From Laetmonice hystrix (lineage: Eukaryota), in the NCBI GenBank assembly GCA_965235115.1, contig OZ249447.1, positions 25,172,001 through 25,236,000 of the forward strand: a DNA stretch of 64,000 nt. The letters are read 5' to 3'. The notes under the pieces are model-generated. The model did not search any database. It was not told where the DNA came from and saw only the letters and a list, made by a program, of their open reading frames with translations. This document shows, one piece after another, positions 1-21,800 of this stretch (its first letter is position 1; each line of letters starts with the position of its first letter). The translations under genes were made by a program, and so were the position numbers.

Positions 1-2052
1 GTGGTTTATCATGGGCGTGTTGTTCCCCTCCCCACCCCAACCCCCACCCCAACCCCATCAAGCCCGCCGGTAGGGTGACGGCTGGTGACCTTCACGTCAC
101 ATTGACGTGTTTACACCAGGCCCGACCCCCGCCGATGAATGTGGCCGACGCCAGGATGTGTTTTTAAACTGGCGGAGAGTGCGCGGGTACCGGGGATACG
201 GCAGGTGGCTCTACTGCTCGCACTAAAGCAAAAGTCGTCTTGGAGTTCTTACTCAAAATTAAGGCAAAACCAATTTCCAACCATTAGTTATCTTTGAGTT
301 CTTTTGGGTAAATGGAGGAAGTTGCCACTCATGCAGGTATTGTGGGTGCGGCTATAGAAGTCTAACTTAGGTGCAGATATTTTGGGAATGGTTATAGAAT
401 GGGTATGTAACCTAGATACAGATATTGTGCGGTGTAGCTAGGGTCATCGCTTATAGATCGCATTTAGATGGTAGTGGGATGTAATTATAGAATAAATATA
501 TAGCCCTATTACAGGCCCCAAACTGGCCCCCAAATCTCCAAAAAAAACTATCTATATCCCCGTCCCAAAGCCAATCCCTGCCCCTCACCCTAACCCTGTC
601 CCTCAGAGCAGAATCTTTACACATTGCGGGGGTTTTACATACAGGGGCAAATATTTTTACATATTGCAATAGTTTTACATATAGAGGACGTTTTACTTAT
701 ACGGGCTGTACACCCCGTGGGAATATCACCATGGGGATTAACGGGCACAGGACACCATCCCCACGGCAAAAACACCGCCTCCGGTATGCCTGCCTCACAA
801 CCTCCCTGCCCTTCTCAACATCAAGTGACGATTAAAGACAATCCTCAAAAAACGACGCTCCCGAAAAAATGAAGTAAATGCAACGACTAAGGAAATGTGC
901 TGATTTAGCAAAATTTGAAGGACACTCCAAAGACATTGCAGGCTTTAACTGCTTGCCGAGCTCGGAGGAAGGGATGATTATGCGCTGGTGGTTGGCATGC
1001 CAGGGCGGTCTGAGGGACCAGTGGCTGCAGTATGTGATGGTGCGATCAGCTGGCCGCCGCAGCAGCTGTAGCCCCAGCACACCAATCGGTTGGCGATTGT
1101 GTCTACAGGTAGGAATGGTGCAATCAAGGCTGGGAGAGTGGCCGGCTCCATCCGCTGGCTGACCGGCCGGCCGGCTGGTCGGGCATTTTCTGTGTACAGC
1201 GTCCATAGTAATAATACTGGCACTCGCCAACTGCACAGACTCGTGTCTCCCAGTGTAGGGGCAGGTGTGCGTGCTGCAGCCATGTGGGATAATATATATA
1301 CATGTATATAAGTTAGTACGGTGGTGATAGGGTGGGAGAGACGTGTCGGGATATAAAATTAAGTGTTGATTCGAAAGTTACAACTGCTGCCAGGTGCTCG
1401 AGCTCAGAATATCATCGTTTTCATCAACTTCCTCATGTTGCGAATCTACTTAAGAAGAATAATGCTGAAGGCTAGCGAAGAGGATTTGGGACAGGGAAAG
1501 TTAGCATGAGTAGGATTAGATTAGCACAGTTTGGGATACGGCAGGGCCAGGTTAGCACTGACAGGTGCAGAACAGGCTCGGAGCTGGCAGGCGTGCGTTA
1601 GCAGACTGGTGAGACCAAAATTTGTTTACAGGGAGGTGTTCAAAGAATAACACCGGTAGCTCACTGTGAATTATTACTGATACGTACTGCCGACCAGGAG
1701 CAGCCGAAATCTACACGGCTGGATAACGTCCATCTGAATTCATGCCGATGGAAATATTGCTCTTGGATGCGAGCGAATAAAACCATAAAAATGGATCTGA
1801 TCATTCATTTTGTTTAAACCAACTTATTTGCATTTGCTGAAGGTTTCTATAAATGTATAGGATAGATGAGGAGGCTGTGGGTTTGTGTATGGGAGGTCAT
1901 GTCGTTGTGGGAGAGGCTGTATATAAAACGTCCTGTGTGTTGTAGATCTTCTCTACATGTATATTCCTCAAGTTTTACGCCTGGACCAAATGCTGTCATC
2001 ATTATTTTCATAGAACCATAGGACCACGTTCATCAGACCCCATAGTATGGGG

Positions 2053-3147
2053 TGCCAAGTGTTACCTTTATAATTTCGTACACAGAATTCTTTTTCGTAA
2101 ACGAAATTATAATTTCATACACGAAATTCGTTTTCGTAAACGAAATTATAATTTCGTACACGAAATTCTTTTTCGTAAACGAATTTATAATTTCGTAGGC
2201 GTAATATCCATTTCATATATGGAATGACTTTTGTCTACGCAATAATTAATTCCGTCAACGAAATTCACTTCTGTCTCAGTGGCATTTAGTACACGAAATG
2301 GACATGGTGGAGACGAAATTCCATTCTGTATACATAATGGATTATTGTGGGGACGAAATAACATTTCGTAGACAAAATGTATTTTATGGCAAGGAAGTCA
2401 ATTCCGTGGACAGAATTGATTATTATGTACACGAAATTGAATTTCGTACACAAAATGGACTTTGAGGAGACGACATTCCATTCTGTATACGGAATAGAAT
2501 TGTTGAGACGAAATTATACTTAATAGAAGGAGCAAAATGTGCCATCATTCTCATAGACGGAATGGATGTACTGTGGAGAAGAAATAGAATTGCGTACACG
2601 AAATGAATACTATGGAGACGGAATTCCATTTCATAGACAAAATGGATGATTGTTGAGACGAAAGTGGATTTCGTTGATGGAATTGATTTTTGTGTAGACG
2701 AAATGTCAATTCATTTACGAAAAAAAAATTCGTGTACGAAATTGTAATTTCGTTTATGAAAAAGAATTTTGTGTACGAAATTATAATTTCATTTACGAAA
2801 AAAAATTTCGTGTTCGTGACATGTAATGGATACTGTGGAGACGAAAATCATCCTCAGAGACAGAATGGATGTACTGTGGAGACGAAATGGTATTTTGTAC
2901 ACGAAATGAATACCATGGAGGCGAAATTCCATTTCGTAGACAGAATGGATGATTGTTAAGCCGAAAGTGAATTTCGTTGACGGAATTGATTATTGTGTAA
3001 ACAAAATGTCATTACGAAATGGATATTACGTCTACAAAATTATAATTTCGTTTATGAAAAAGAATTTAGTGTACGAAATTATAATTTTGTTTACTTCGTT
3101 TACGAAAAAGAATTTCGTGTACGAAATTATAAAGGTAACACTTGGCA
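2053..3147. mobile_element. Foldback-like non-autonomous DNA element with long, internally repetitive terminal inverted repeats
   Basis: The terminal ~53 bp TGCCAAGTGTTACCTTTATAATTTCGTACAC... is a near-perfect inverted match. Imperfect pairing extends ~220 bp. The arms contain ~39-bp subrepeats and the interior has many GAGACGAAAT/CACGAAAT motifs. Confidence 0.75.
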
Positions 3148-3336
3148 TTGGTCCCCGTTCGTCCTTGGGTAATCTTTGGGTCGTTTAACCAGACAGGCAC
3201 TGAAACTTTAGTTTGAGTTCTTGACATGTTACAGTACGTGGTTGGTGTTTGTAATGTAGCCAGCATATTGCGGCCTTGTTGCAGTATGTATCCAAAAGTC
3301 AAATCTGAATGTTTGTTTGTTTGTTTGTTCGGCCAG

Positions 3337-3528
3337 GTCTAAGTGGTTCGGCTGCTGACATTAAAAACCGCATTGAAGTGTTCGGTTCGAACGTGATACC
3401 TCCGAAGCCACCCAAGACGTTCCTGACGTTAGTGTGGGAAGCCCTTCAAGATGTCACCCTTATCATCCTCATTGTCGCTGCCATCATATCCCTAGGACTT
3501 TCATTTTACAGGCCAGAGGACGAAACGG
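3337..3528 (+). CDS. ATP2B: PMCA exon: end of N-terminal domain and TM1 ([12 protein letters not shown]...[10 protein letters not shown])
   Basis: ccag|GT acceptor, G|gtaagc donor, 192 nt, phase 1-1; [24 protein letters not shown] is typical PMCA sequence. Confidence 0.96.
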
Positions 3529-6500
3529 GTAAGCCCATTTTTGTAAACATTGCTCTTTTCAAATTGACCCATCTAATGGAAATAGTACTACTACTATAGG
3601 TGAAGTTTGTAAGGAAATGTTATTCTTTAAGATGTGATTCCAACTAAAAATGTGAATCCTTTTTAAGGTGCCCCCCCCCCCCTTAACTGGAGAACCTGGT
3701 TTTTCCTGACCTGTTTAGTGGTTGGATTGAGAGGCGTGATGGTAACTATTTGTGTACCTTAACACTGCCCACTGATCTACCACCCTAACCGTGTAAAGAA
3801 GTCCATTGGCATTGGATTCATGTCTAGTTTTTTCAACCTGATAGATATGTGACATGATGCATGCAAAGGGGGTTTCCCGGGAGTGCCAGGGTTAACGTCC
3901 TGGGTGTAAATGGTTGTACCAGGAGTGCCAGGGTTAACGTCATATTGTACCAGGAGTGCCAGGGTTAACGTCCTGGGTGTAAAGGATTGTACTGGCAGTG
4001 CCAGGGTTAACGTCCTGGGTGTAAATGGTTGTACCAGGAGTGCCAGGGTTAACGTCATATTGTACCGGGAGTGCCAGAGTTAACGTCCTGGGTGTAAAGG
4101 GTTGTACCAGGAGTGCCAGGGTTAACGTCCTGGGTGTAAAGGGTTGTACCAGGAGTGCCAGGGTTAACGTCATATTGTACCGGGAGTGCCAGAGTTAACG
4201 TCCTGGGTGTAAAGGGTTGTACCAGGAGTGCCAGGGTTAACGTCCTGGGTGTAAAGGGTTGTACCAGGAGTGCCAGGGTTAACGTCATATTGTACCGGGA
4301 GTGCCAGAGTTAACGTCCTGGGTGTAAAGGGTTGTACCAGGAGTGCCAGCGTTAACGTCCTGGGTGTAAAGGGTTTTACCGGGAGTGCCAGGGTTAACTT
4401 CCTGGGTGTAAAGGGTTTTACCGGGAGTGCCAGGGTTAACATCCTGGGTGTAAAGGATTGTACCGGGAGTGCCAGGGTTAACGTCCTGGGTGTAAAGGAT
4501 TGTACCGGGAGTGCCAGGGTTAACGTCCTGGGTGTAAAGGATTGTACTGGCAGTGCCAGGGTTAACGTCCTGGGTGTAAAGGGTTGTACTGGCAGTGCCA
4601 GGGTTAACGTCATATTGTACCGGGAGTTCCAGAGTTAACGTCCTGGGTGTAAAGGGTTTTACCGGGAGTGCCAGGGTTAACGTCCTGGGTGTAAAGGATT
4701 GTACCGGGAGTGCCAGGGTTAACGTCCTGGGTGTAAAGGGTTGTACCAGGAGTGCCAGCATTAACGTCCTGGGTGTAAAGGGTTTTACCGGGAGTGCCAG
4801 GGTTAACGTCCTGGGTGTAAAGGATTGTACCGGGAGTGCCAGGGTTAACGTCCTGGGTGTAAAGGATTGTACCGGGAGTGCCAGGGTTAACGTCGTATTG
4901 TACCGGGAGTGCCAGGGTTAACGTCCTGGGTGTAAAGGATTGTACCGGGAGTGCCAGTGTTAACGTCATATTGTACTGGGAGTGCCAGTGTTAACGTCAT
5001 ATTGTACCGGGAGTGCCAGTGTTAACGTCATATTGTACCGGGAGTGCCAGGGTTAACGTCATATTGTACCGGGAGTGCCAGGGTTAACGTCATATTGTAC
5101 CGGGAGTGCCAGTGTTAACGTCATATTGTACCGGGTGTGCCAGGGTTAACGTCCTGCGTGTAAAGGGTTGTATCTTGGTACCCAGTGTTGTCGGGGTGGA
5201 GGTTAGGGTTCGGTGATATTGGTGGTTGCTGCATGCCTGTGTTACTGACAGTCCTTGTCTTATTCCGCCCCCCATTCAGAAACAGAAGGCCTGCACGGTG
5301 AGTGACGATGACATATCCAAGTATAGATTTACAACTTTCATTGTCTTCCTGATTTCACATCCTCTTTTTAATTGTTAATATATAGATGTGTATATTATTT
5401 ATGTGAACTAACAATTTTTATTTCGATTGTGTTGTTCATGCAGGCAGCAGCCTGATAAACGCCCTATTTTGCGGCGGTAGAGGCTGCCTGCTCAATTGAT
5501 TAAATTTTACTTCAACTCTCAACATGTGGGGATACTTAAATTTGGAAAATAAGTATTAGCATGAACAAGAAGTAGCATGAACCGAAGACGTTTTTGTCTT
5601 TTTGCTAACCAAATTTGGTGCAGACACCGGCGATTTTAAATTGGCCTGTCTTTGATCTATTAACGGTGATAATCATTGTATTGTACAAGATAAGTTCCCA
5701 ACTCTCGAAGAATCATTAAATTTGTGAAAATTTAAAAAGCATGAAATTTTGCATGTACCAATACCTACAGAATCAAATAAGACCAACAGACGTTAAACGA
5801 ATTCAAGATGGCCGACAATTTAGAATCTAATTCTGAAAAAGAATCGCCATAAATTGACTTAAAAGTTTTCCTGAAGCGTCAAATAGACATTTGGCATCCA
5901 TTTACATGCGGTAAAACGGGATTAACAATTTGAAAAATTCAAGTTGGCGGCCAGTATTAATAGTAGCCGACGTTTGTTGTGTATTATACCGCTAAATTGT
6001 CAGTTTGCCAGTGTTACAGACATAACATGGAGCTGTGAGCTTTTACTAGCCTACTAGTAGTGCAATTTTGGAATATAAAACTAAGCTGTTTTAAATTTAA
6101 ACTATACCTTTCTTCAACACTGCCTCGGTTTTTCTTTCTGTTGGTGTCCAATTTGGTTTTTAATTTATCATCCATGATAACATGTTTCCAGCAGATTTTC
6201 ATGTGCTAGTTGTTATTAACAGCATGCTTGCATAGTTAAGTAGATGAGTGCTATCATGGCTTTTATAGAGGAAAGTTCATTGTTGTTTGAGTGAGAAAGA
6301 AAATGTGGCTGAATAATGTGCCACAACAAATTTCCAATAGCGCCGAATATTTGAAACAGTCCACAGGATACATGGAAGGTCGTCTACTGCAGAATTCTGC
6401 CCATGTACCAGCTCCCTTCATTGGTAGTCCATTCGCACCCAGTTATAACATCTAGGATCGCATTGTTGGGACATGTAAATTAAATCCAGCGATTTTTCAA

Positions 6501-9500
6501 AAAATGTAAGCGTTAAAATATTACAGCGAATCATGTATTATCTCTCCCCCCCCCCCCCCCCACCCACCAATTTTATTTCGTCGAAATGACTCTCACATTG
6601 TTCATGGACAGAATGCAGTAGATGGTCTCTGAACGGTTGATTGTTTGTTCCATCTATTCACATACATTTGTATACGTTTCAGATGAGGTGGCATTAATAT
6701 TTTACGAATTGTTGAGAGACGCTGCTGATGTATATTATTGCAGTGCCTATTGAAGGCCCAAATAAGATTAATTATGTCGATTAAGGATGGTCAATCGTTG
6801 GGCTTTAAACCAGACTACAGTTGGTGTACCATTGGTCGGCAGGGTCCGACCACAATCTAATTAAAATTAGATCTTAGTAGGCCTATTCCGCGTCTCTCTC
6901 GGCTGTGTCAATGCTGTCTGCGCTCCATAGGCTACCTAGATCTAAGGAAATCCCATTAGGGGTCACCTCAGGTTGACCTCTGGATTCAGCCAATCAGCGA
7001 GTCGCCTACGAAATCTTCGGTGTGCGCTCGTAGGCATTTTCAACGGCACACTGGGTCAAAGGGCAGCCTGAGTTGACCCCATACGGGATGCCGTTAGATC
7101 CTAGTATGGAGCGCATGCGAAATAACTAAGATCTAATTTTAATTAGATTGAGTCCGACCACCGGTGGGCAGGGTCCGACCACCGGTGGTCATCCAAGGCC
7201 AGTTGATATATCCCTGCTCCACTGATCAGGATGGTAGTAACAGCTTGTTGCTGGTTTTATCCTCCTCCTCCTACTGTCTATTGTAATTCCTGGTGTAGGC
7301 TCTCGAAACGGTCCCCGATTTGTCATTACGAGTCTGTCAGGGATCAGAAGCACCGGCTCTTGATTCTATGAGATGTTGGAGTGTTAATTACGCGTGCTTA
7401 ATTAAGTGTGCCTAATTAACAGGTTCAAAGATTCCAATATATGTTTTCTTATAACGTCTTTATGGTAATCATGTGTGTGAACCCGCTGTATAGGTATTCT
7501 AGCGTTGAACAGAGATGGCAGTTATTGTGTTTGGTGTCTTAAAGTCTTTGGTGATTGGAAAAGAAAGAGATGGATTATTTACATTATCAACTGGTAAATC
7601 CTTGTGGCAGAGTCTTCTAGGTTACCGAGTATCAGCTTCTTTCACTTTGTCAAATCGGAAAAATTTGAGTAATTAATATAAGTGCTCATGAAAAAGGCAG
7701 GATATATAGGCGAAACGCAGAATATATTATTTGGGGGTTTTTTTACAACCTTTCTCAGCGTGAGCCGAGTTCTTAAGCAAAGGTATACATGAAATGACGA
7801 CAGCTGTCCAGAATCTGTGAGACTCTGCCATATTTAATTTTGAATATGAAACATAATTTTGTAATTATTGGCCCGTAGATTTTCAGCAACGGTATTGATA
7901 AAATTGCCTTGCTGTCCTTGCGACGATGTTGATTATGTTTCATCTATCCGAGGTTCGGATTGGCTGACTTAACAGTTAACATGGATACGGTGCCCCTGGT
8001 GCATGGCCAAGGTGCCCCTGGTGCAATGCCAAGGTGCCCCTGGTGCATGGCCAAGGTGCCCCTGGTGCATGGCCAAGGTGCCCCTGGTGCATGGCCAAGA
8101 CAACAGTACTGGCAGGGCCCAAAGGTGCTGTGGATCCTGTATCTGGTATATTGATCTTAAGAGTCGATCATTATCTCAGAGATACGATCCATGGATGATG
8201 GTGCCTTGCCTTAACTATTAATGCAGCCTCTGAAGAAACTTAGATTAGAAACTACAAAAGTAGGTCCTATTGACCTATTTTTTTGGAAACCTGTGGATGG
8301 CCTTTATACGATGTATAATTTGTGTTTATTTATACGCTGCAGCCTCCGATGCGAGTAAGTTCCCTTCCAAGTTTCCATGCTGTGTTCCCACACACGTACT
8401 GAAGGGTCCGAGTTTAGCACAGACTGGTGTATTTCTGTATTGAGCGGACGGTGGTGATCAGTTTGTGTGTGTGTGTCATGGTCCCGTGTACCCGTGTGTA
8501 GATTGGCGGGCTGCCTGGTCTATACTAGGGAAAGACGCCACCACAGAGTTCACGATATAAACTAGGAAACAGCCAGGCCAGCGCTTACAATGCAAACGAC
8601 ACCAAGTCCAATCCATATATATGTCAGGAACAGGAGCAGTATTTTTGACACACCGTCAACGCTTGAAATAGAAAGTAGACTGACATAATAGTAACAAGAA
8701 TATCGTTTAATCCGCTGGAGCCCAGAGGGCAGGAACCCCAAGGGCCGGAACCCCTTTGACCTTAAAACACTGGCGATTTTAGAAGAGATTTGCAGACAGC
8801 CACATTTCAGATATGCCCTAATAAGACCAGCGTAGACGTGGTACAAATACATGTCTTGCTATCGTAGTCAGAGATACTCAGTGACAGAAAATAGTGTTAG
8901 AAGATTACGAGTATCTCACCTATTTTAAAGGTACCCGCCGTATCCTTTCCCATTACCTTGACCCAAACGAAAATGGTTTCCTAAAAAAGTACTTGTTTTG
9001 TTGCACTTTGTCCAAAGATTCAACACGCATGAAATTTGTACTCAATTTGAAAAAGGCATGGCCATTCCATGTTGTATGAAGGCGTTTTGATAGTCCCTTG
9101 TTCCGACTTATGTTTGTAAACATTTACAACTATGTTATATGTTCACCTGCACCGGATGGTATACACCCTGTAGTTGCCTTTTGAATTCCCCCTGAGTGAG
9201 TTTTTTATTGGAAGAATAAATCTAAGGATTATGGCAGTTTAATTCTAAATTTTAAAACTCCGGTCCTCGTTTTGACAGATTTGGCATCGAAGTTAGCACG
9301 AATTGACCAAATAAGTATCATCTTGATCTATGTAAATTTCCCAGTGAAATATTGATATTCTTTTTTATATAATGAAAAAGAAACTACCCTTTTTGATATA
9401 TCCTTTTGGTTAGATATCATTATACCCGTTTTACGCCTAAAACCGGTCCGTTCCAGTTTTTTTGACCATTCCGCCGCACCCGCCTTTCCCTCGTGTTTAT

Positions 9501-9776
9501 AATAGGATGCTTGCTGCCTTATTTTGTCAGTTTGTTTTAGACCCCGCAGAAGGTGAAGATCTGCTGGGTTGTCGGGTCGTGAGGGTAATTGCTGTATAGC
9601 GGTACCCGCTGGGAAGCTGGTTTGAAATTTAACTAGACTAACAGCATGGCTGCGTGAAGTGGGAGCATCAGTCACATTCATGGCCATACATTGATAAAGG
9701 ACTGAAGAGATGGAGCATTTTCAGCCAGCGTTGCATCCACATCCTTATATGCTGCGATTGTGCAAAGCAGTAGTGT

Positions 9777-9837
<61 letters not shown>

Positions 9838-12800
9838 CACAAGTGGTGGTCAACGAAGAAGAGATGGACATTTCCTTATATAGGTTCCACCATGTGCAAT
9901 GGAAGTACCGCAGTGGTGGTCACAGTGATCTGCTGTTGTCGATGATGCACATTGGTTTGAAAAGCATTGCCAGAACCCCCTGCACAAAGGAGACATTGGC
10001 CATGTTTGAGTCAACCCCTTAACCCGAATCATTGCAGTCCTCGTCCTCCCGGGCCCATATTAGTTGGAACTAGACCTATTGCATCTCAGTGAAATGTTTG
10101 ATAAATTATGGTGCGCGTTCGTGTGGACGTATTTGGTGGTTGCAAGTACCAGACAGTGTGCCGGCTGTGCGTTTCGTGCGGAGATGCAGTGCCCATGCAG
10201 GAGCCGAAACAAGCGGTTCGTTTGGGAGGCCAGAGTTTGAACTCAGAGATGGCACTCGTCTTACTCGTCCCAGAGAGAGAGAAAGGGAGGGAGATGTCGA
10301 CACAATTGATTCAGCTCGGATCTAAAAATGACGCTTGTGCACTTGGTGGAGCCATCGGCCGGCAGGGAGCTGACTGCCAGGAGGTGGACAGCGGTGGCTG
10401 GGCTCAGGCTGTGAATGGGTCGTTTGGCGGGGGACCGTGTTGGCCAGGCTCAGGCCGTGAATGGGTCGTTTGGCGGTGGACCCTGCTGGCCTGGCTCAGA
10501 CTGTGAATGGGTCGTTTGGCGGTGGACCCTGCTGGCCCGGCTCAGGCTGTGAATGGGTCGTTTGGCGGGGGACCGTGTTGGCCAGGCTCAGGCTGTGAAT
10601 GGGTCGTTTGGCGCGGGACCCTGCTGGTCCGGCTCAGGCTGTGAATGGGTCGTTTGGCGGGGGACTGTGCTGGCCAGGCACAGGCTGTGAATGGGTCGTT
10701 TGGTGGGGGACCGTGTTGGCCAGGCTCAGGCCGTGAATGGGTCGTTTGGCGGGGTACCGTGTTGGCCAGGCTCAGGCCGTGAATGGGTCGTTTGGCGGGG
10801 TACCGTGTTGGCCAGGCTCAGGCTGTGAATGGGTCGTTTGGCGGGGGACCGTGCTGGGTCACAGCGCTGGCGCGGCTCAGGCCGTGAATGGGTCGTTTGG
10901 CGGGGGACCGTGTTGGCCCGGCTCAGGCTGTGAATGGGTCGTTTGGCGGTGGACCGTGTTGGCCCGGCTCAGGCTGTGAATGGGTCGTTTGGCGGGGTAC
11001 CGTGTTGGCCAGGCTCAGGCCGTGAATGAGTCGTTTGGCGGGGGACCGTGCTGGGTCACAACGCTGGCCCGGCTCAGGCTGTGAATGAGTCGTTTGGCGG
11101 GGGACCGTGCTGGGTCACAGCGCTGGCCCGGCTCAGGCCGTGAATGAGTCGTTTGGCAGGGGACCGTGCTGGGTCACAGCGCTGGCCCGGCTCAGGCTGT
11201 GAATGGGTCGTTTGGCGGTGGACCCTGCTGGCCCGGCTCAGGCTGTGAATGGGTCGTTTGGCGGGGGACTGTGTTGGCCAGGCTCAGGCTGTGAATGGGT
11301 CGTTTGACTGACCCCAGCCTGGAGCTGTAGGACGGCACGTCTGCCAGGGAAAGGACATACCTCAGCGCAATCTATCTGCAGATTTCCTCACACCGTCTCC
11401 ATCGTTCTCATCATCTCGGTGGGTGCCTGTCTGTCTCACAGACGTTCTGTCGTATTGTTACACCATCCCACTCACTAGGAATCGCTAAGATTCTGGATGC
11501 AAAGTGAAATGGGGACTAGCAGGCTGCTGCTGCTGCTGCCAGCTGGCAGGATTTCAGTCCTTGCCAAAGCGACGGCATCTGTGCTGGCGGAGTGGCCTGG
11601 GGGAGGTTGGCATGACAGCAAGCATGCCACTTGAGGTAGATTTCAATTATCTGCGGTTGTCTGTCCTTCGTATCACTGCCCAGAACCAGAGTCTTGATCT
11701 TCCTTGGGTGACGGCCAAGGTTTTCAAATGTCACCAGTAAAACCGTAAACAAACAACAATTAAAAAAAACCAACAAGAGGTTGGATTTATAAAGGTCGCG
11801 GTTTGCCATCAGGGCAGCTCAGAAGCTGACCTTGAAAGATGGCAGTGGTCGCCGTCAGTCCATGTGTTAATGTGGAGAGTCGCTGTAAGGTGGTCAACTT
11901 CCTTCCTTAACTAATGGTCGCAGCAAGGGAGGTTTACGATCATATCATGTAACAATGCCACGGGAAGGAGGGTAAGCCCAGTTTTGTGAAAACTTGTTGT
12001 TTCTTAAGCTTTAGCTTAACGCCGCTGTTCTGCTGTCCAGCTTAGACCTGCCAACGATAAGCGTTAGGCATAAGCAAGAGCTTAAGTTTTGCAGAGCCTT
12101 GCCCAGGTCTGGCGGACTGGGCGGGAGAAGTGGCGAGTTTGATGCCCATCGCTGATTGGTTGCTTGTGTTTTCTGGCCAGTAGTGAGATGAACAGGTAAT
12201 GTGGGTTTAGCCAGTGCAGACACTTGGAGCGACAGTAACGAGTAGAGCTGGGCGTCTAACATGATTGGACCGAGTTTAACAACCGCCAACTTGGCCCAGC
12301 CAACGCGTCCTTCTGCCCAACCGAAAACGAGACAAAACAACGGGTGGGGGGCTTTACACGCCCTCTGGCGGAGACAAAGTGAACTGCTTGCCTGGTGAAG
12401 GGACCACGTGGGGGCCATCACTGTGGAAGGGATTATCGTGGCTGATCCCCACTGCGGTTAATCCCAGGGAAATGTCAGCGCCGGGCACTGATAGCGGTAA
12501 ACCGACCAAGGCCAGGGGTTAATGATTGACTTCAGACATCAAAACTGGGCTGCGTTTCATATCTCATGGCTCTTCATTACAATGGATGACTCTCCCATCA
12601 CAGAGATTATTGCATAGATACCCTGGCAGAGAGAGAGAGAGAGAGAGGGGGGGATGAAATACTGTCTATATTTAGATTTAGGGTAGAGGCAGCGGTGGTG
12701 TAGGTTTCCCCTTGGTTGATTAACTAGTTGGTGTTAGTGCAGGTTATCGTGATGAGACACCAGGGACTGGGTCCCAGTTAGAAAACCACTATTCGCACGA

Positions 12801-15800
12801 TCACCAACCACAGGCCAGTGCCCAGTCGGGGGATTTTGAAAACAGAGTCAGTTCTGTGTGGTTGGGTCCGGTTTGAAGTGGCCACTGGTTCCATGGGAAT
12901 AAGACAGAGATTCCGAGATGGTTCTCGCCCCTTCCACTGTCCACCCGGGGGAAATCACCCTGAAAGGGGTACAAGTGGCTCGTATTATTATTAATAGTGA
13001 ATATGATTGTAAAGGATTTGGTATGGTGTTTCGGGGAACATCTACTTGGGTAGAAGGTACTGGTGGATTAGAATGTAATTCAGTACAGAAACAGAATCAT
13101 AAATGTTTGTAAACTGCGCCACAGCATGACAAAGTCAGACCTATAAACTGCGCCACAGCGTGACAAAGTCAAACCTGTAAACTGAGCCACAGTGTGACAA
13201 AGTCAGACCTGTAAACTGCGCCATGGTGTGACAAAGTCAGACCTGTAAACTGTGCCACAGCGTGACAAAGTCAGACCTGTAAACTGTCAGGCCTGTAAAC
13301 TGCGCCACAGCATGACAAAGTCAGACCTGTAAACTGTCAGGCCTGTAAACTGCGCCACAGCATGACAAAGTCAGACCTGTAAACTGTCAGGCCTGTAAAC
13401 TGCGCCACAGCATGACAAAGTCAGACCTGTAAACTCTGCCATGGTGTGACAAAGTCAGACCTGTAAACTGTAGCACGACGTGACAAAGTCAGACCTGTAA
13501 ACTGCGCGACGGTGTGACAAAGTCAGACCTGTAAACTGCGCGATGGTGTGACAAAGTCAGACCTGTAAACTGCAGCATGGTGTGACAGTCAGACCTGTAA
13601 ACTGCGCGATGGTGTGACAAAGTCGGACCTGTAAACTGCGCCACGGTGTGACAAAGTCAGACCTGTAAACTGCAGCATGGTGTGACAGTCAGACCTGTAA
13701 ACTGTGCCATGGTGTGACAAAGTCAGACCTGTAAACTGCGCCACGGTGTGACAAAGTCAGACCTGTAAACTGCAGCACGACGTGACAAAGTCAGACCTGT
13801 AAACTGCGCCACGGTGTGACAAAGTCAGACCTGTAAACTGTGCCATGGTGTGACAAAGTCAGACCTGTAAACTGCGCCACGGTGTGACAAAGTCAGACCT
13901 GTAAACTGCGCCACAGTGTGACAAAGTCAGACCTGTAAACTGCAGCATGGTGTGACAAAATCAGACCTGTCAAAACTGCAGCACACCACGATAAAGTCAG
14001 ACCTGCACGCAGCGTCGCAGCCTGACAAAGTCAGACCCGCGGCACACACCCAAAAGAAACTGACCGTTGACAAATGCTGTCAAAGAGGAGGAAAATGTCA
14101 GAGGGCCTAGAGCAAAACGTGCGGAGTCGCCTTTTATCTTTGGTGGCATACTAACTAGCATTCCTGGCTACACCAGACCGGAATGGCCAACACAGCAGGC
14201 AGTGTAGCTTTGATTCTCTCACACTCACACAAGCTGGCACTCTTTGGAGACCAACAAAAGCACTTCTTTTTAATCAGATTTATAGGATAAGTGTCTCTCG
14301 AACTGAAGAGGTGGCCAGTAGTGGGTGGAGATGAGTTGAAACGGCATTAAAGCACCAGTCTTGGAATCGTCTCCTGTTTGCGTACCGCGCACCGTGAACA
14401 AGCTTCTGTCGAATGTTCGGGGGGGGGATACGTGACGAAGAGACCACCTAGATCCGATAGAAAAATGAATATAAGTCGGTCCGTATTTTGTGTCACAAAA
14501 GTTCAAAAATTAGTGGCGTTTTTTTCTGAGGGGACAACTCATAATTATTGAGAAAGCCTTCATTCGAAGGCCAGAAGCCTTGGACAACGATTGGTGCAAA
14601 TAGAAAGAAAATGTATAGTGTGGATCGAAAGTTATGCTTCTGTAAGTAGTGCGTGGTCAGAGGGAACGTTACACGTGTGGCAGTCAGAGCTTCAGTCAGT
14701 GTCAGCAGGAATGACAATGGAGAGTCCGTCTGAACCCTTTCATGGGCAAGGGACACCATTGTGTAAACAGGATCTTGGGGGACCTACATTGAAATGTAAA
14801 TAGTTTGAGGTCTGTGAGGGCATTTCAGTGACCATTATCACCAATCGTTGCGTAACACGCCTAGCTTTCGAATGAGGGGTTCACCAAAGCAATATGACTG
14901 GGGGTTGTCCTCTCAGAAAAAAATAATTTGGGAACATCCCACATATATTGGAAAGATACAATAATGCAGTACGCCGTTGGCCTTGGTTAAGATGTACTAG
15001 GATTTATGATCGCAATATCTTTCAACGTTTGGTGTCCACCAATTTATGAATGCAGTCTTTAGTCCCACAGGCAATTTTAAACCAACAGGGAATACTGGGC
15101 CCTGATGAAGGCATCGACCCATTTATGGTTTCTGGGTCAATTATTGAACGGTCCATCGGGCCTGTCCCATCGGGGAGCAACATGGACAGGGAGGGCCAAA
15201 TGTTGTAATAACTGGCAGCCTTGTTATGACAGGTGTTGTCATGACAGGCACGCTGTTATGACAGGGCGTCATTATGACAGGCACGTTGGAATGATTGCAA
15301 TATGATATTATGACAGGAGTGTCGTTATAGGGTTATTTTGTTAGAAACATTCCTATTAGAAAGAAGAACTAATTATGTTAGAAAGTAGTTATGCTATGAA
15401 AGGCGTGCCATGGGTATTCGTTGTCAAAGTGTGTACCGGTAGTATTACCGTGGTAATATCAAAATAGTTGATGTGAGGAAACTTGTGGACCTGTTGAAAA
15501 GTTGAGAGATATTTTGTATACATTGTATGTGTAGTGCACTTACCTATGTATCTTCATCCACCGTCTACCCTGCACAGGAACCCATATAGCCAGCACCGTG
15601 TGAACGTCATGACGTCAAGTTCCAGACGGCAGCGAAGAGGGGGGGGGGGGGTCATTATATGTATTATAGATGGTATTACACGTATAGATGCATGAATGTC
15701 CCCCATTTCGTCGAAAGTTAAACAAGTCTGCATCATAATAATGCATGGAATCGAAACTGTACCAGCACTACGTGTTTATTAACGTCTTTGATGCTAGAGT

Positions 15801-18800
15801 CTACAACGACCCAGGCTACACTGACGTTTCGATGTAGTGTCTGTTGTCTCGTATTTCCAGGTAGTCGTTACCCGCAGAAGGTTACGGAAAAAGACAATTG
15901 GAGAAATTAGTGAAGGTTTACTTTAATGTGGTGCGGTGTATGGACTGGTCCTGGCCGGACTAGCGGTATTAAAATGGCCTTAATTAAAGTATTAGACGAT
16001 ATGTGCTCCATTTAAAGATTCTGTACATATCTTGACATTTACATTTTCACATTTTCTCTGCCTCGTAATGTGCTATTTTCATGATGGGTCTGTCTCTCCC
16101 GTATGGAAAGAGTAACGTCTGTTAAAGGTTAGATATAATTGGAAAAACGTAGACTTGTAAAAATATGGCACCCTTTCAGGACACAGGTTGTGCTCGATCT
16201 ATGGCCGTGTGTGTTTGGGTGGGTGGGTGCCGAGCAGATGCACCCGCTTATTGCAGATCTAGAATATATATAAAAATAATTGACGAATGATAATCAAAAT
16301 GGACAGGAAAATTTTGTAGTTTCAAGCTCGAAATGTGGAATCAGTTTTATGGAGGAGAATGTTGTTTCCGTTGTTAACTTTGTCATCACAATAGAATGGT
16401 GAGTGGGTCATTCTTAAGTCCAACTGAAAACATGCCGAGTTATTCTTTCGATTGACATTGCGGAAAAATTAGACGTTAAAATTGGTTAACATTTGCAGAC
16501 TATAGGTCCGTTGATGCCGCCGGGCTGAGTTGAATAGTTAAATGTAATGTTTGAACGTACTGATTAAAGTTTCAGGACCAAGTAAAGGTGTCCTCTGCCT
16601 GCGGCCTTTTGTTTCAGTTCGACTCTAACAAATGATGGTGGATTATTGGAAATCATACTATCACTAACTGTAAGATTGATAATTATATATGTGTACAGGA
16701 GGTTCAACATTTCGTCGGCCTGCTGATAAAACCTCGGAACTAAAAACTAGTTGTTTCCATTATTATATTAACTGAGTAAATGATGATATAACATTTACTT
16801 CGTAAAATAAGACATTTGATTAAAGTTTTATTATTTTGAAGATACATGTACCAGATTTTATTGGCAGGCCAGCGATTTGACATTGTCAGCATTGAACGTC
16901 ATGTGCCCCCCCCCCCCCCCCCCCCCACAGCAACAGATCGCTGCTGTTAATTGATGTCATGATATAACTCCTATTTTTTTATAACTCTAATAAATACCAT
17001 GAAGTGAGTTGGACAGTTTTAATGAATGTGTTCTTGTTTTGGTTGGTTTCAGTGGGAGGCGATGACACAGAAGCTGAGGCGGGGTGGATAGAAGGCGTGG
17101 CCATTCTTGTTGCTGTCTTTGTTGTAGTTTTTGTAACTGCTTTCAATGACTGGAGAAAAGAAAAACAATTCAGAGGACTTCAAAGCAAAATAGAATGTGA
17201 ACATAGATTTTCTGTTATCCGAGGTGGAGAAGTTGTACAAATCCCTGTTGGAGATATAGTAGTAGGAGATATTTGTCAAGTTAAATATGGTAAGTACTAA
17301 TTTTATTTATTTATACTAAATTTGTGTGCCGATTTAAATGTTTATGATTACTGGCGAGGAATCAAGACTATTTAGCGAGGACGGATTATTGAAGAAAAAA
17401 CGGTAACGAATAAAGTCAGTCTCAAAAGGATTTTCCCCATTTATATAATACTTTAGGTACTGAGTATTTTGTGATACCTTAACCTAATGGCGTACATCCA
17501 TTGTGGACTTTTGCCTTATGATGTACCATAGAAATCTCCATGTGTTTAGAAAATAACAAAAAGTGTTTTGTTATAGGTGACTTGTTACCGGCGGACGGGG
17601 TGGTTATACAAAGTAATGACTTAATGGTCGATGAGAGTTCGTTGACGGGAGAGTCCGACCATGTCAGGAAGGGGGAAGTCGTCGACCCCATGTTACTCTC
17701 AGGTACATACATACTCCCAACTTTACCAAAGAATAATTCATACATTAAAAAAAACTCATTGAGAAATCAAAGCATACCTTTTGTGAACGTAACTCATTGT
17801 AAAGCATCAGGTAAGAGGGGTTTTTTTCTTGGTGTATCTCCGTACTAAGGAGATATTTAATTTTACTGATTATACATACTTGGCCCGAGTAAGTAAAGCC
17901 TAGGTGACTGATGCCGGTCTCTCTGGCTAAACGTATAAAGTCATTCATCAAGTGACGAGGGTTAGGTAGTACAGTTTGAGTGCACGTGGTTTATTGACAG
18001 TGGTTGGATGTAAAAGGGCGTTGGTACGTTATTGGGGCGTTGGTACGTAAAAGGGCATTGGTACGTCATTGGGGCGTTGGTATGTTATTGGGGCGTTGGT
18101 ACGTTATTGGGGCGTTGGTACGTAAAAGGGCGTTGGTACGTCATTGGGGCGTTCGTACGTAAAAGGGCGTTGGTACGTAAAAGGGCGTTGGTACGTAAAA
18201 GGGCGTTGGTACGTAAAAGGGCGTTGGTACGTTATTGAGGCGTTGGTACGTCATTGGGGCGTTGGTACGTTATTGGGGCGTTGGTACGTTAAAGGGCGTT
18301 GGTACGTTATTGGGGTACACCCGTCAATGGGATGGTTCCGAGGTGCAGTATGGGACTGTGACTTGACGTATCACAGATCGCAGGTTAAACCTGATGAACG
18401 TACACCCGTCATTAATGGGACGGTTCCGAGGTGCAGTATGGGACTGCCGCTTGACGTATCACAGATCGCAGGTTAAACCTGATGAACGTACACCCGTCAT
18501 TAATGGGACGGTTCCGAGGTGCAGTATGGGACTGTGACTTGACGTATCACAGATCGCAGGTTAAACCTGATGAATTTACACCCGTCATTAATGGGACGGT
18601 TCCGAGGTGCAGTATGGGACTGCCGCTTGACGTATCACAGATCGCAGGTTAAACCTGATGAACGTACACCCGTCATTAATGGGACGGTTCCGAGGTGCAG
18701 TATGGGACTGCCGCTTGACGTATCACAGATCGCAGGTTAAACCTGATGAACGTACACCCGTCATTAATGGGACGGTTCCGAGGTGCAGTATGGGACTGCC

Positions 18801-21800
18801 GCTTGACGTAGCACAGATCGCAGGTTAAACCTGATGAACGTACACCCGTCATTAATGGGACGGTTCCGAGGTGCAGTATCGGACTGTGACTTGACGTATC
18901 ACAGATCGCAGGTTAAACCTGATGAACGTACACCCGTCATTAATGGGACGGTTCCGAGGTGCAGTATGGGACTGCCGCTTGACGTATCACAGATCGCAGG
19001 TTAAACCTGATGAACGTACACCCGTCATTAATGGGACGGTTCCGAGGTGCAGTATGGGACTGTGACTTGACGTAGCACAGATCGCAGGTTAAACCTGATG
19101 AACGTACACCCGTCATTAATGGGACGGTTCCGAGGTGCAGTATGGGACTGCCGCTTGACGTAGCACAGATCGCAGGTTAAACCTGATGAACGTAGAGTGC
19201 ACGTATTCCGTTAATGAAATCCAATGGGGGAGGCAAGATCCCGGATGTCAGGAGCCGCCCAGATAAAATCAGATCAGTAAGAACAGCGGGTTGGGATTTG
19301 TGGGGGGCAAGGGGTGTGCACGATGAATGAGTTATATAATACTGGGGTCTATGTTGTATATTATATTTAATGTACCGTCGGTGCGGTATTGGCGCGGAAT
19401 TATGCGGCAGTGCCCGTGTTTCTTTAGCCTGCCCGGACAATGTGTGGGTTCGGGGCAGCGGGCGCGGGAGGAAATAGCTGCAGCCTGAGAAGCCATCTTT
19501 AATTCAGTCTATATGTGAATTCGGTCTCTGTCTCCCCGTGACTACAGCAGGGGCTGACGACAACGCCGGGCTCCAAACGCCGGATCCTTTTACTCTATAT
19601 GCAGCCTTAGAATTAGACCCTTGTAGAAATCGATGCTAATGTAATGTCCCGCTCTGCCCGTGGCTTGATTCCAATGTGTTTAATTTGCCAGCTCAGCATT
19701 TAACATGGTGAAGGCGGCGCTGCTGTTGGTGTGTCACGGTAGGATATTTTATGAGCACAGGCTTGCATACAGAGATGGGTAAATATTGGGTGCACAAAGT
19801 CAGCATTCAAGGTGGGCAACAAACAGCGTGCACAAAGTCAGCACCCAGAGAGGGGCGAAAATACACCCGAGTGCACAAAGTCGGAATTAAGGCAAAGGTA
19901 TAGGAAAAAGTTGGTGAACCAATGTGGCATGCAAGAATATGGGTAAATGTTGGCTTTGGGATTCAAGAAAGATATGAAATGGTTGGTGCAGAGAATCGGC
20001 AAACAAAGATCGTTTGAGAGCGAGACGATATCCCCATTAGATAATATTTGAAATATGGTATTTGGTATTGCTTTCAATTGAAGGGTCGCTGGAGGGTTAT
20101 TTTTGGCTAATTTATTCCTTCGGCATTGGATGATGGGAGGAATAAAAACGGAAACGCCACCTGTTAGTACATGTCTGTTATATGTACGGTAAACGACAGA
20201 GATGTCTACGGAAAGAAGGCAGTCAGAAATACTCATCTATATCATGTAAATGTTGATAGCAGCTTTCTTAGTCACGGCGCTATCGTACCTCCACTGTATT
20301 CTAAGTATGTGTACGCCTCGTAAATGAATGTTGACAAAAACCGGTAAGGGAGAGATATCTAGAGGTGTTTATATGGTTCATCGATCGAAAATAAAGATCC
20401 ATAGCCCTGACCTTATCACTAACCCTATCCCCGGTCCCTCAACCTTCCAACCTCCCTATCCCTGACCTTCACCCGAACCCCTGCCCATTTGTGGGGAAGT
20501 TACCATGGGGGATTACCGTTTTATCGCCTGATTATTATGGCGAGGTGTTGGGGTGGAGAAGGTGAGATGGTTAGAGGGGCCGGATACCGTCGTTGTTATT
20601 GCACACTGTAGACACTGAGACAATTCAAAGGAGGCCTGACATCGGGGTATACCTGTGCGCCCGCCTGTGTGTGTCAGTCGGTCTGAGGGTGAGGGGAGGG
20701 GCAACCACTGGAGGTCGTCCAGGAGCTGAGGCCAGGGTTGAGCCACCGAGAGACTTGGCAGCCAGGTAAACTCGCCAGCCACAGTGCTGGAGCAACAAGA
20801 GCAGCGCAAGCCTTCTACTTCTGCCCCTTCTCCTCCTCCTCCTTCTCCTTCTCCTCCTCCAGTATACTGGTGGAGTAGCGCTGGGTGATGCATGGGAGGA
20901 GGGGGAGGCAGCAANNNNNNNNNNNNNNNNNNNNNNNNNNNNNNNNNNNNNNNNNNNNNNNNNNNNNNNNNNNNNNNNNNNNNNNNNNNNNNNNNNNNNN
21001 NNNNNNNNNNNNNNNNNNNNNNNNNNNNNNNNNNNNNNNNNNNNNNNNNNNNNNNNNNNNNNNNNNNNNNNNNNNNNNNNNNNNNNNNNNNNNNNNNNNN
21101 NNTCATTGGCAACAGCCACAGCGACAGAAGATCAATACAAGGAGGGCGGACCGACCGGCCGGCCGAGCGGACAGGAGGAGACGACAGTCTAGTCGCCGCC
21201 GCCGAGCGCCGCGCCCGCCCGCCCGCCCGCCCGCCTGCCGCCTGGCCGACCACTAGCCGCCGCTCTCCTCGTGTTGGTGGCGGCCTGCCACCGGCTCCCT
21301 CACTCCACACAGCCGGCGCCGGGCACAACTCCTTGTCCTGACCTACTGGCTTATGTTCGGCTCAACGCTGACCGCCCCTGGCTGGCCTCGCTGTGCCTTG
21401 CATAAATAGCCGCACTGGCGACACCAACAAGCTCGCGCCTGAAGCTTTTCACCAAGGCAGCCGCGATCCAAATTTTGAAAATAAATAATAATTTTTATAA
21501 ATAAAGGAGCAGAATATTGAGGCGTTTCTCGCCTGACCAAACTCATGTTTCCAGCTTAAGACCAACGCAACTGTTATCTGTTAGCCGGCACGATAAAGAT
21601 AATGGGAGGTGTGTGCCGTGACTGATAACCAAGTAATTAGGGTGGTAGTTTTCGTATTGGTATGGATCTTAGGATCCTTGGGTTATAGAAGAAAGGACCC
21701 TTTATTCAGTGTTAGATGTGAGTAACATGTTTCACCAGGATCCATGAAGGAGAAACATAATAATTTATTATCGGTATATTAATCTGTTACAGTGGGATAC

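What the first reader, a model, noticed from the sequence alone, without database searches (positions are those of the whole stretch)
5280..8354. Hidden microexons in the first EXTRACELLULAR loop of PMCA: a splice site outside the known A and C sites
Seen: the 13.5-kb intron between the TM1 and TM2 exons (phase 1) holds two tiny segments with full splice signals, 18 nt at 5280-5297 (GTGAGT donor, TACTGAC branch) and 12 nt at 8343-8354 (GTAAGT donor). Both preserve the frame and are stop-free. They would turn RPEDET-VGGDDTE into RPEDET-ETEGLH-(ASDA)-(V/M)GGDDTE. Established: regulated splicing of mammalian PMCAs is at cytosolic site A and C-terminal site C. Inference: this lineage may tune an extracellular surface of the pump (partner or toxin binding, trafficking) by microexon choice, giving up to 4 loop variants.
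Basis: partly seen in the sequence, partly recalled or inferred. Interest (0 to 1): 0.8.

Follow-up and report, generated by a model that had tools for sequence, protein, structure and literature searches.

The report
Loop-lengthening microexon in calcium pump
One of the two proposed mini-exons, an 18-base exon adding six amino acids to the first outward-facing loop of the cell's calcium-export pump, appears in spliced RNA and is conserved in related species. The 12-base one has no support, and similar loop variants are already annotated, though not discussed, in shrimp, lobster and sawfly genes.

Summary
Both segments are in the sequence exactly as described. They lie in the 13.5-kb phase-1 intron between the TM1 exon (3337-3528) and the TM2 exon (17053-17289) of the genome's only PMCA gene.

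The 18-nt segment (5280-5297, ETEGLH) is very probably a real exon. An RNA-type contig of the same specimen covers the TM1 exon and, by depth arithmetic, 19 letters at 5279-5297, with no flanking intron. In a sister species, 5275-5315 is the only alignable island in an otherwise unalignable intron. Two more distant relatives carry a frame-keeping GTGAGT-flanked microexon candidate in the same intron, encoding SQQGHHP and ESGGHHQS.

The sister species' RNA contig joins TM1 directly to TM2. The exon is therefore probably a cassette, but inclusion and skipping were not seen together in one species.

The 12-nt segment (8343-8354) is no better than chance. It has no RNA cover, no conservation and no orthologue.

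The site is not unique to this lineage. RefSeq isoforms and transcript contigs of Penaeus, Panulirus, Procambarus, Cherax and Cephus differ by 3-21 residues at this same intron position. Full-text searches found no paper describing it.

The suggested function, tuning of the TM1-TM2 tether or the caloxin-type allosteric site, is inference.

The parts
3337..3528 (+). TM1 exon of the PMCA gene (…[63 protein letters not shown] plus G; ends in phase 1; donor gtaagc)
   Evidence: Pfam PF00690, E 1e-13. Covered by RNA contig X4 record 9 (3339-3527) and by contigs of the sister species.
5243..5279 (+). 3' splice region of microexon A: branch-type TACTGAC (5243-5249), pyrimidine tract (ccttgtcttattccgccccccatt) and cag acceptor
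   Evidence: Read directly. Pyrimidine fraction is 0.84, unique among 15 comparable candidates in the window and matched by 1% of shuffles.
5280..5297 (+). Microexon A, 18 nt, AAACAGAAGGCCTGCACG. It inserts E-T-E-G-L-H between RPEDET and VGGDDTE and leaves the flanking Val codon unchanged.
   Evidence: In RNA-type run X4, depth in bin 5214-5387 is 2.49, which equals 22.8 x 19/174. That is 19 letters of the contig that also covers the TM1 exon up to 3527, and the flanking intron bins are zero. Sister-species DNA aligns only at 5275-5315. Candidates in L005 and L001 sit in the same intron.
5298..5315 (+). Donor GTGAGT and the conserved first 18 nt of the downstream intron
   Evidence: X6 record 18 of organism B aligns through 5315 and then diverges. 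The donor GTGAGT is identical in L005 and L001.
8343..8354 (+). Candidate B, 12 nt, CCTCCGATGCGA (ASDA): splice-like but unsupported
   Evidence: Signals are at chance level. RNA run X4 and sister-species runs X5 and X6 show zero depth in bins 8172-8500. No counterpart was found in the introns of L001, L004, L005, L006, L009 or L010.
17053..17289 (+). TM2 exon ((V)[21 protein letters not shown]…QVKY; ends in phase 1)
   Evidence: Closest solved structures are PMCA2 (9gsd, E 2.6e-31) and PMCA1 (6a69). The loose end of sister-species RNA contig X5 at 3528 reads straight into this exon.

Best explanation
Segment A (5280-5297) is a genuine 18-nt, phase 1-1 coding microexon of the single PMCA gene. 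When spliced in, it lengthens the first extracellular loop (TM1-TM2 linker, 'extracellular domain 1') from [16 protein letters not shown] to [22 protein letters not shown]. It changes nothing else in the protein.

It is most likely a cassette exon that cells include or skip. This would give two pump variants that differ by two Glu, one His and six residues of tether between TM1 and TM2.

Inferred mechanism:
- TM1 slides by about 10 A between E2 and E1. Peptides binding extracellular domain 1 (caloxins 1c2 and 1b3) inhibit the pump allosterically.
- A longer, more acidic and His-bearing tether would therefore shift the E1/E2 equilibrium or turnover rate. It might also change the sensitivity of the exit side to extracellular pH or divalent cations.

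Segment B (8343-8354) is a chance splice-like match.

Shown: the sequence, the splice signals, presence in spliced RNA (by depth arithmetic), conservation, and skipping in a sister species.

Inferred: regulated alternative use within one animal, and any functional effect.
For: (1) RNA.
- Run X4 (same sample as the DNA runs) holds 0.81 of the TM2-exon words but only 0.22 of an exon-plus-intron stretch. It gives no depth over the intron apart from a repeat.
- Its 434-nt contig (depth 22.8) lies on 3339-3527. That is one letter short of the exon end, as expected if the ambiguous G was assigned to 5279.
- Bin 5214-5387 has depth 2.49 = 22.8 x 19/174. The same arithmetic reproduces the listed X6 piece (11.3 x 41/174 = 2.66; table shows 2.67).

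(2) Sister species (organism B, 9 differences in 190 nt of the TM1 exon).
- Its DNA contig aligns to 3339-3533 and then only to 5275-5315 (36 of 41 identical).
- The spacing in that contig is about 514 nt instead of 1751.

(3) More distant relatives.
- In L005 the only candidate is 8111-8131 (cag|GCCAACAAGGACATCATCCTG|gtgagt, SQQGHHP).
- In L001 it is 1803-1826 (cag|AATCAGGAGGACACCACCAATCTG|gtgagt, ESGGHHQS).
- The two are reciprocal best local matches within their introns (score 20 against a mean of 10.7-10.9, sd 2.1).
- They share G-[L/H]-H, phase 1 and the GTGAGT donor with the window.

(4) Skipping. RNA contig X5 of organism B (3405 nt, depth 192.8) runs from 3528 straight into TGGGCAGCGACGACACAGAATCGGAAGCGG, which is the TM2 exon.

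(5) Precedent at the same intron position.
- Penaeus monodon X1/X3 carry SGPQ-EGNTE-VGHH; X2/X7 carry SGPQ-VGHH.
- Panulirus ornatus, Procambarus clarkii and Cherax quadricarinatus vary by plus or minus APE.
- Cephus cinctus varies by plus or minus 21 residues.

(6) Mechanism background.
- TM1 'sliding door', and the neuroplastin helix far from TM1-9 (PMC6127144).
- Extracellular domain 1 as the caloxin allosteric site (PMC5586781).
Against: - The joint 3527/3528 to 5279/5280 was not printed by read laying; repeat joints filled the table. Inclusion therefore rests on depth arithmetic and the piece's end coordinate, not on a displayed junction.
- Contigs show only dominant forms. No run showed both forms, so the exon could be constitutive in this species and lost or unused in the sister species.
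- The window's exon is not the top nucleotide match to the L001 and L005 candidates. Homology with them rests on position, phase, donor and a three-residue motif.
- More distant relatives (L009, L010, L006) show no such exon.
- No tissue information is available.
- The functional effect is untested, and the loop may simply tolerate length variation.
Confidence: 0.8

Rival explanations
1. Microexon A is real but constitutive in this species. The sister species has stopped using it, so this is a species difference and not regulated alternative splicing.
For: Only an inclusion contig is seen in X4 and only a skipping contig in X5. The depth of bin 3474-3647 in X4 is fully explained by the inclusion contig plus a short contig for the SNP allele, leaving no room for a skipping contig.
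Against: The exon and its donor flank are the only conserved island in the sister species' intron, which argues that the exon is still used there. Contigs drop minor isoforms. In arthropods the same position is annotated with both forms within one species.
Confidence: 0.25
2. Both segments are chance splice-like matches in a long intron, and there is no microexon.
For: Shuffled introns yield about 5.7 AG...GTRAGT in-frame stop-free segments. No junction was printed explicitly. The window exon's nucleotide similarity to the relatives' candidates is weak.
Against: An RNA run has 19 letters of cover exactly at 5279-5297, with zero cover on both flanks, at the depth of the TM1-exon contig. A 41-nt conserved island sits in the sister species. 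L001 and L005 carry reciprocal-best candidates with the same phase and donor. The acceptor is exceptional.
Confidence: 0.05
3. Both A and B are used, giving up to four loop variants. B would be a rare, perhaps neural, microexon. It does carry a UGC directly before its acceptor (gcTGCag), as SRRM4/eMIC-dependent exons do.
For: Canonical cag acceptor and GTAAGT donor, frame kept, and a TGC 2 nt before the AG. Contigs cannot show rare isoforms. The 33 letters of the X4 contig beyond microexon A were not displayed, so they could in principle be 12 + 21.
Against: Signals are at chance level. RNA and sister-species runs give no depth at 8172-8500. None of six relatives' introns has a counterpart. 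A purine sits at donor position -1.
Confidence: 0.06

Closest known systems
Alternative splice sites A (first cytosolic loop) and C (C-terminal calmodulin-binding domain) of vertebrate PMCA genes
   Same: Same gene family, and small in-frame exons generate pump isoforms. This gene also has a site-C-like pair of alternative exons at 49120.. and 51439.., both matching PF12424 positions 15-44.
   Different: Sites A and C are cytosolic and change lipid and calmodulin regulation and targeting. Microexon A lies between TM1 and TM2, on the extracellular side. Five full-text searches found no paper describing splicing there.
Loop-1 variants in annotated arthropod PMCA isoforms (for example Penaeus monodon XP_037784670.1 with EGNTE against XP_037784618.1 without; Panulirus ornatus X3/X6/X7 against X4/X8; Cephus cinctus X1 against X6)
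   Same: The insertion sits at the same place, directly before the split Val/Leu codon that opens the TM2 exon. Inserts are short (3, 5, 10 or 21 residues), in frame and often acidic.
   Different: The inserted sequences are unrelated in length and letters to ETEGLH, so common origin is unproven. They are automatic gene models and transcript contigs, not studied isoforms.
Extracellular domain 1 as the caloxin 1c2/1b3 allosteric site of PMCA4/PMCA1
   Same: It is the same loop. Ligand binding there inhibits transport allosterically, which shows that the loop is coupled to the catalytic cycle (PMC5586781).
   Different: Caloxins are synthetic peptides acting on mammalian pumps. Here the loop itself is altered by splicing, and the effect is untested.
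Conserved bilaterian (largely neural, SRRM3/4-eMIC-dependent) microexons
   Same: Length is 27 nt or less, the frame is preserved, the exon sits in a surface loop, and it is conserved between species.
   Different: Microexon A lacks the UGC element close to its acceptor; the nearest TGC lies 46-53 nt upstream. Tissue specificity is unknown. This comparison rests on my own knowledge of that literature.

Membership tests
PMCA (P2B-type plasma-membrane Ca2+-ATPase) gene | N-terminal cation-ATPase domain and closest solved relatives are PMCAs | tested here: met
   PF00690, E 1e-13, on the TM1 exon. The TM2 exon hits PMCA2 9gsd (E 2.6e-31) and PMCA1 6a69 (E 7.7e-31).
PMCA (P2B-type plasma-membrane Ca2+-ATPase) gene | C-terminal calmodulin-binding tail (PF12424) and the DKTGT phosphorylation motif | tested here: met
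   PF12424 positions 1-16 fall in 44974-45246, above the cut-off. Positions 15-44 fall in 49117.. and 51397.., below the cut-off when each exon is scored alone. CSDKTGTLT lies in exon 35800-35928. Exons match an insect PMCA (P0096) at 38-96% identity (most at 64% or more) over nearly its whole length.
Cassette microexon | Length 27-30 nt or less, a multiple of 3, with canonical AG and GT on both sides | tested here: met
   18 nt, cag|...|gtgagt, with a branch-type TACTGAC and a strong pyrimidine tract.
Cassette microexon | Present in spliced RNA | tested here: met
   By inference from depth (2.49 = 22.8 x 19/174) and from the TM1 piece ending at 3527 in RNA-type run X4. The junction row itself was not printed.
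Cassette microexon | Both inclusion and skipping forms in the same species | tested here: inconclusive
   Inclusion was seen only in organism A (X4) and skipping only in organism B (X5). Contigs hide minor forms.
Cassette microexon | Conservation of the exon above the intron background | tested here: met
   41-nt island in organism B. Same-phase GTGAGT candidates in L005 and L001, reciprocal best within their introns.
SRRM4/eMIC-type neural microexon | UGC element within about 15 nt upstream of the acceptor; neural inclusion | tested here: not met
   For A the nearest TGCs lie at -46, -50 and -53. B has gcTGCag but no other support. Tissue specificity cannot be tested with these tools.
PMCA splice site A or C | Location in the first cytosolic loop (A) or the calmodulin-binding domain (C) | tested here: not met
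   The exon lies between the TM1 and TM2 exons, in the loop preceding GWIEG, which is extracellular in PMCA1/2 topology. It is therefore a separate site.
Arthropod loop-1 cassette (RefSeq isoforms) | Insertion at the TM1/TM2 intron position; sequence homology of the insert | tested here: inconclusive
   Same position: met. Homology of ETEGLH with EGNTE or APE: too short to test.

The most novel reading that the evidence does not exclude
The TM1-TM2 intron of PMCA hosts an old, recurrent third splice site across protostomes (this worm-like lineage, decapods, a sawfly). Its cassette exons set the length and the acid/His content of extracellular domain 1. Animals would use it to tune pump kinetics, or the pump's sensitivity to extracellular pH, metals or ligands, from the outside. 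This would be a regulatory axis that the vertebrate-centred PMCA literature has missed.
Probability: 0.2. Interest if true: 0.65.

Novelty: new variant of a known kind. Interest (0 to 1): 0.45.

Why it matters
PMCA isoform diversity is described as arising at two cytosolic sites. Splice-controlled variation of an extracellular loop would add a third site on the opposite face of the membrane.

That loop is already known to be allosterically coupled to transport, because it is the caloxin site, and it tethers the moving TM1 helix. The hypothesis is directly testable by expressing the plus and minus six-residue pumps.

The same position varies in annotated crustacean and insect isoforms, so the phenomenon may be widespread and overlooked. 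The practical weight is moderate. The insert is small, the loop is poorly conserved and probably flexible, and no functional effect has been shown.

Tried and rejected
- Homologue searches with single exons returned almost only genomic single-exon ORFs. No transcript-derived fragment crossed the loop, so annotated isoforms of close relatives could not be read.
- A composite alignment of an insect PMCA with the window's exons, meant to reach full-length close relatives, was misaligned by MAFFT and abandoned.
- A search seeded with a Priapulus fragment gave full-length PMCAs. None was closer than about 72% to this gene, so the taxon stays unidentified from my own data. Other agents' notes call the genome a polychaete (unchecked).
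- DNA of the sister species (contig of P0151/P0397) and of two further relatives could not be fetched because the files were too large.
- blastn of the microexon region against the relatives' introns found nothing. Only the rule-based scan found the candidates.
- No shared regulatory motif was found around the three microexons. TGCATG at -50 occurs only in the window, and TGACAT downstream occurs in two of three.
- Rfam found nothing in 3000-18000.
- Neuroplastin or basigin contact as the purpose of the insert is unlikely. The subunit's helix binds TM10 and the TM8-9 linker, far from TM1-9.
- Both sequencing-run searches and the single read-laying run were used. The junction rows for 3528>5280 and 5297>17053 were crowded out by repeat joints, so no second look was possible.
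Full report
**Observation.** The window carries most of a plasma-membrane Ca2+-ATPase (PMCA) gene on the + strand, from about 3337 to 51621.
- Its exons match an insect PMCA along nearly the whole length.
- They hit PF00690 and PF12424.
- The closest solved structures are PMCA2 and PMCA1.
- A six-frame search of the whole 627-Mb assembly finds only this one TM1 exon, so the genome has a single PMCA gene.

The TM1 exon ends at 3528 (…RPEDET plus G, phase 1). The TM2 exon begins at 17053 ((V)[14 protein letters not shown]…).
- cag|AAACAGAAGGCCTGCACG|gtgagt at 5280-5297, preceded by TACTGAC at 5243-5249.
- cag|CCTCCGATGCGA|gtaagt at 8343-8354.

However, dinucleotide shuffles of the intron yield 5.7 such donors on average. 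Their existence therefore proves nothing.

Segment A is distinguished by its acceptor. With 84% pyrimidines it is matched by 1% of shuffles, and it is the only one of 15 such candidates on the + strand of the whole window. Segment B is ordinary.

**RNA evidence.** Two run searches showed the following:
- X1-X3 are DNA of the sequenced specimen; they hold exon and intron words alike.
- X4, from the same sample, holds 0.81 of the TM2-exon words but only 0.22 of an exon-plus-intron stretch, as an RNA library would.
- X5 and X6 belong to a second organism label, B.

Contigs of X4, X6, X5 and X2 were laid on 3300-8500. X4 gave no depth over the intron except in a highly repeated element. Its 434-nt contig (depth 22.8) lies on 3339-3527.

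The bin 5214-5387 has depth 2.49, which equals 22.8 x 19/174. That is 19 letters of that same contig: the ambiguous G plus the 18-nt exon (5279-5297). This explains why its TM1 piece stops at 3527 and not 3528. The same arithmetic reproduces pieces that are listed (X6: 11.3 x 41/174 = 2.66, table 2.67; X5: 192.8 x 55/174 = 60.9).

No other X4 contig depth times an integer number of letters fits as well. The joint itself was not printed, because joints in a repeat filled the table. This is therefore a strong inference and not a displayed junction.

X4 shows nothing at 8343-8354.

**Sister species.** X6 is DNA of organism B, which differs at 9 of 190 positions in the TM1 exon. One contig aligns to 3339-3533 and then only to 5275-5315 (36 of 41 identical), about 514 nt further on instead of 1751. 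The rest of the intron does not reach 80% likeness. The microexon and its donor flank therefore form a conserved island.

X5 is RNA of organism B. A 3405-nt contig covers the TM1 exon, and its loose end at 3528 reads TGGGCAGCGACGACACAGAATCGGAAGCGG. This is the TM2 exon (VGSDDTESEA, matching protein P0397). In that sample the dominant transcript skips the exon.

**More distant relatives.** Contigs holding the whole TM1-TM2 intron were fetched through exon-encoded ORFs.
- In L005 (intron 7284-10073) the only phase-1, stop-free, AG…GT[AG]AG candidate is cag|GCCAACAAGGACATCATCCTG|gtgagt (21 nt, SQQGHHP).
- In L001 (intron 398-4533) the best candidate is cag|AATCAGGAGGACACCACCAATCTG|gtgagt (24 nt, ESGGHHQS).
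- These two are each other's best local match within the introns (score 20 against a background of 10.7-10.9, sd 2.1).
- They share with the window the intron, the phase, the GTGAGT donor and a G-[L/H]-H core. The window's nucleotide similarity to them is not significant on its own.
- In L004 the TM1 exon itself ends …PPEEGHG, as if the same residues were fused to it.
- L006, L009 and L010 (about 72% TM1 identity) show no such exon.
- No intron holds anything like segment B.

**Known elsewhere?** Full-text searches for PMCA with microexon, first extracellular loop or splice variants found no description of splicing in this loop.

The protein database, however, shows variation at this position:
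- Penaeus monodon and P. japonicus RefSeq isoforms differ by EGNTE directly before V-G-H-H.
- Panulirus ornatus isoforms, and Procambarus and Cherax transcript contigs, differ by APE.
- Portunus differs by about 10 residues.
- Cephus cinctus isoforms differ by 21 residues.

All these inserts sit at the position of this same intron. A loop-1 splice site therefore exists in annotation for several arthropods.

**Mechanism (inferred).**
- The insert adds six residues (two Glu, one His) to the tether between TM1 and TM2. The Val codon after it is unchanged.
- In the PMCA1-neuroplastin structure, TM1 acts as a sliding door that moves by up to about 11 A. The neuroplastin helix binds TM10 and the TM8-9 linker, far from TM1-9 (PMC6127144).
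- Extracellular domain 1 is the target of the allosteric inhibitors caloxin 1c2 and 1b3 (PMC5586781).
- A Ciona PMCA binds an extracellular sperm attractant through loops 2 and 3 (PMC6226504).

The most economical hypothesis is therefore kinetic or allosteric tuning through tether length and charge, possibly with pH or metal sensitivity from the His/Glu cluster. A new partner interface is less likely. None of this has been tested.

**Verdict.**
- Segment A: a real microexon (about 0.8-0.9), and probably a cassette (about 0.6-0.7 given that it is real).
- Segment B: a chance match (about 0.9).
- The four-variant scheme is not supported.

The organism was not identified by my own data. Its PMCA is 62-73% identical to arthropod, mollusc, leech, priapulid and vertebrate PMCAs. 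Earlier notes of this scan call the genome a polychaete (unchecked).

Noticed in passing
window 6853-7151: An element of about 300 bp with perfect 25-bp terminal inverted repeats (CAATCTAATTAAAATTAGATCTTAG … CTAAGATCTAATTTTAATTAGATTG), flanked by GTCCGACCAC on both sides. Depth in DNA run X2 reaches about 183,000 against about 53 for single-copy sequence, so there are thousands of copies. It is also present in the RNA-type contigs. It looks like a MITE.
   Followed up: partly
window 49120-49240 and 51439-51621 (after the exon ending ...GLTRLQHQ|gtaggt near 45165): Two alternative exons encode the second half of the calmodulin-binding tail: [22 protein letters not shown]… and [23 protein letters not shown]…stop. 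Both match PF12424 positions 15-44. This looks like an invertebrate counterpart of PMCA splice site C built from duplicated exons.
   Followed up: partly
window 3877-5172, 10401-11306, 13108-13979: Large tandem arrays (units of 42/115, 46 and 34 nt) inflate the TM1-TM2 intron to 13.5 kb. The same intron is 2.8-4.1 kb in relatives L005, L004 and L001.
   Followed up: partly
window 5230-5235: TGCATG (an Rbfox-type hexamer) lies 50 nt upstream of microexon A. It is not present near the candidate microexons of L001 and L005, so it may be chance.
   Followed up: partly
L008:7690-7740: In a JGI-metagenome relative the TM2 exon has two in-frame acceptors 24 nt apart (cag|CGGACCATGATGAAAATGCAG|CCGTGGGTGGAGAC). 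This could add DHDENAA to the same loop through an alternative 3' splice site.
   Followed up: no
window 3461: A T/C difference is carried by about half the depth in both the DNA run (X2) and the RNA-type run (X4) of the same sample. It is a heterozygous, expressed synonymous-type site in the TM1 exon.
   Followed up: no
Proteins P0361/P0516, P0315/P0312, P0541/P0348, P0580/P0301, P0573/P0562: Annotated or transcript-derived arthropod PMCA isoforms differ by 3-21 residues in extracellular loop 1, exactly at the TM1/TM2 intron position (Penaeus, Panulirus, Procambarus, Cherax, Cephus).
   Followed up: partly
window 20915-21102: A run of 188 N (assembly gap or masked stretch) lies inside a later PMCA intron.
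   Followed up: no
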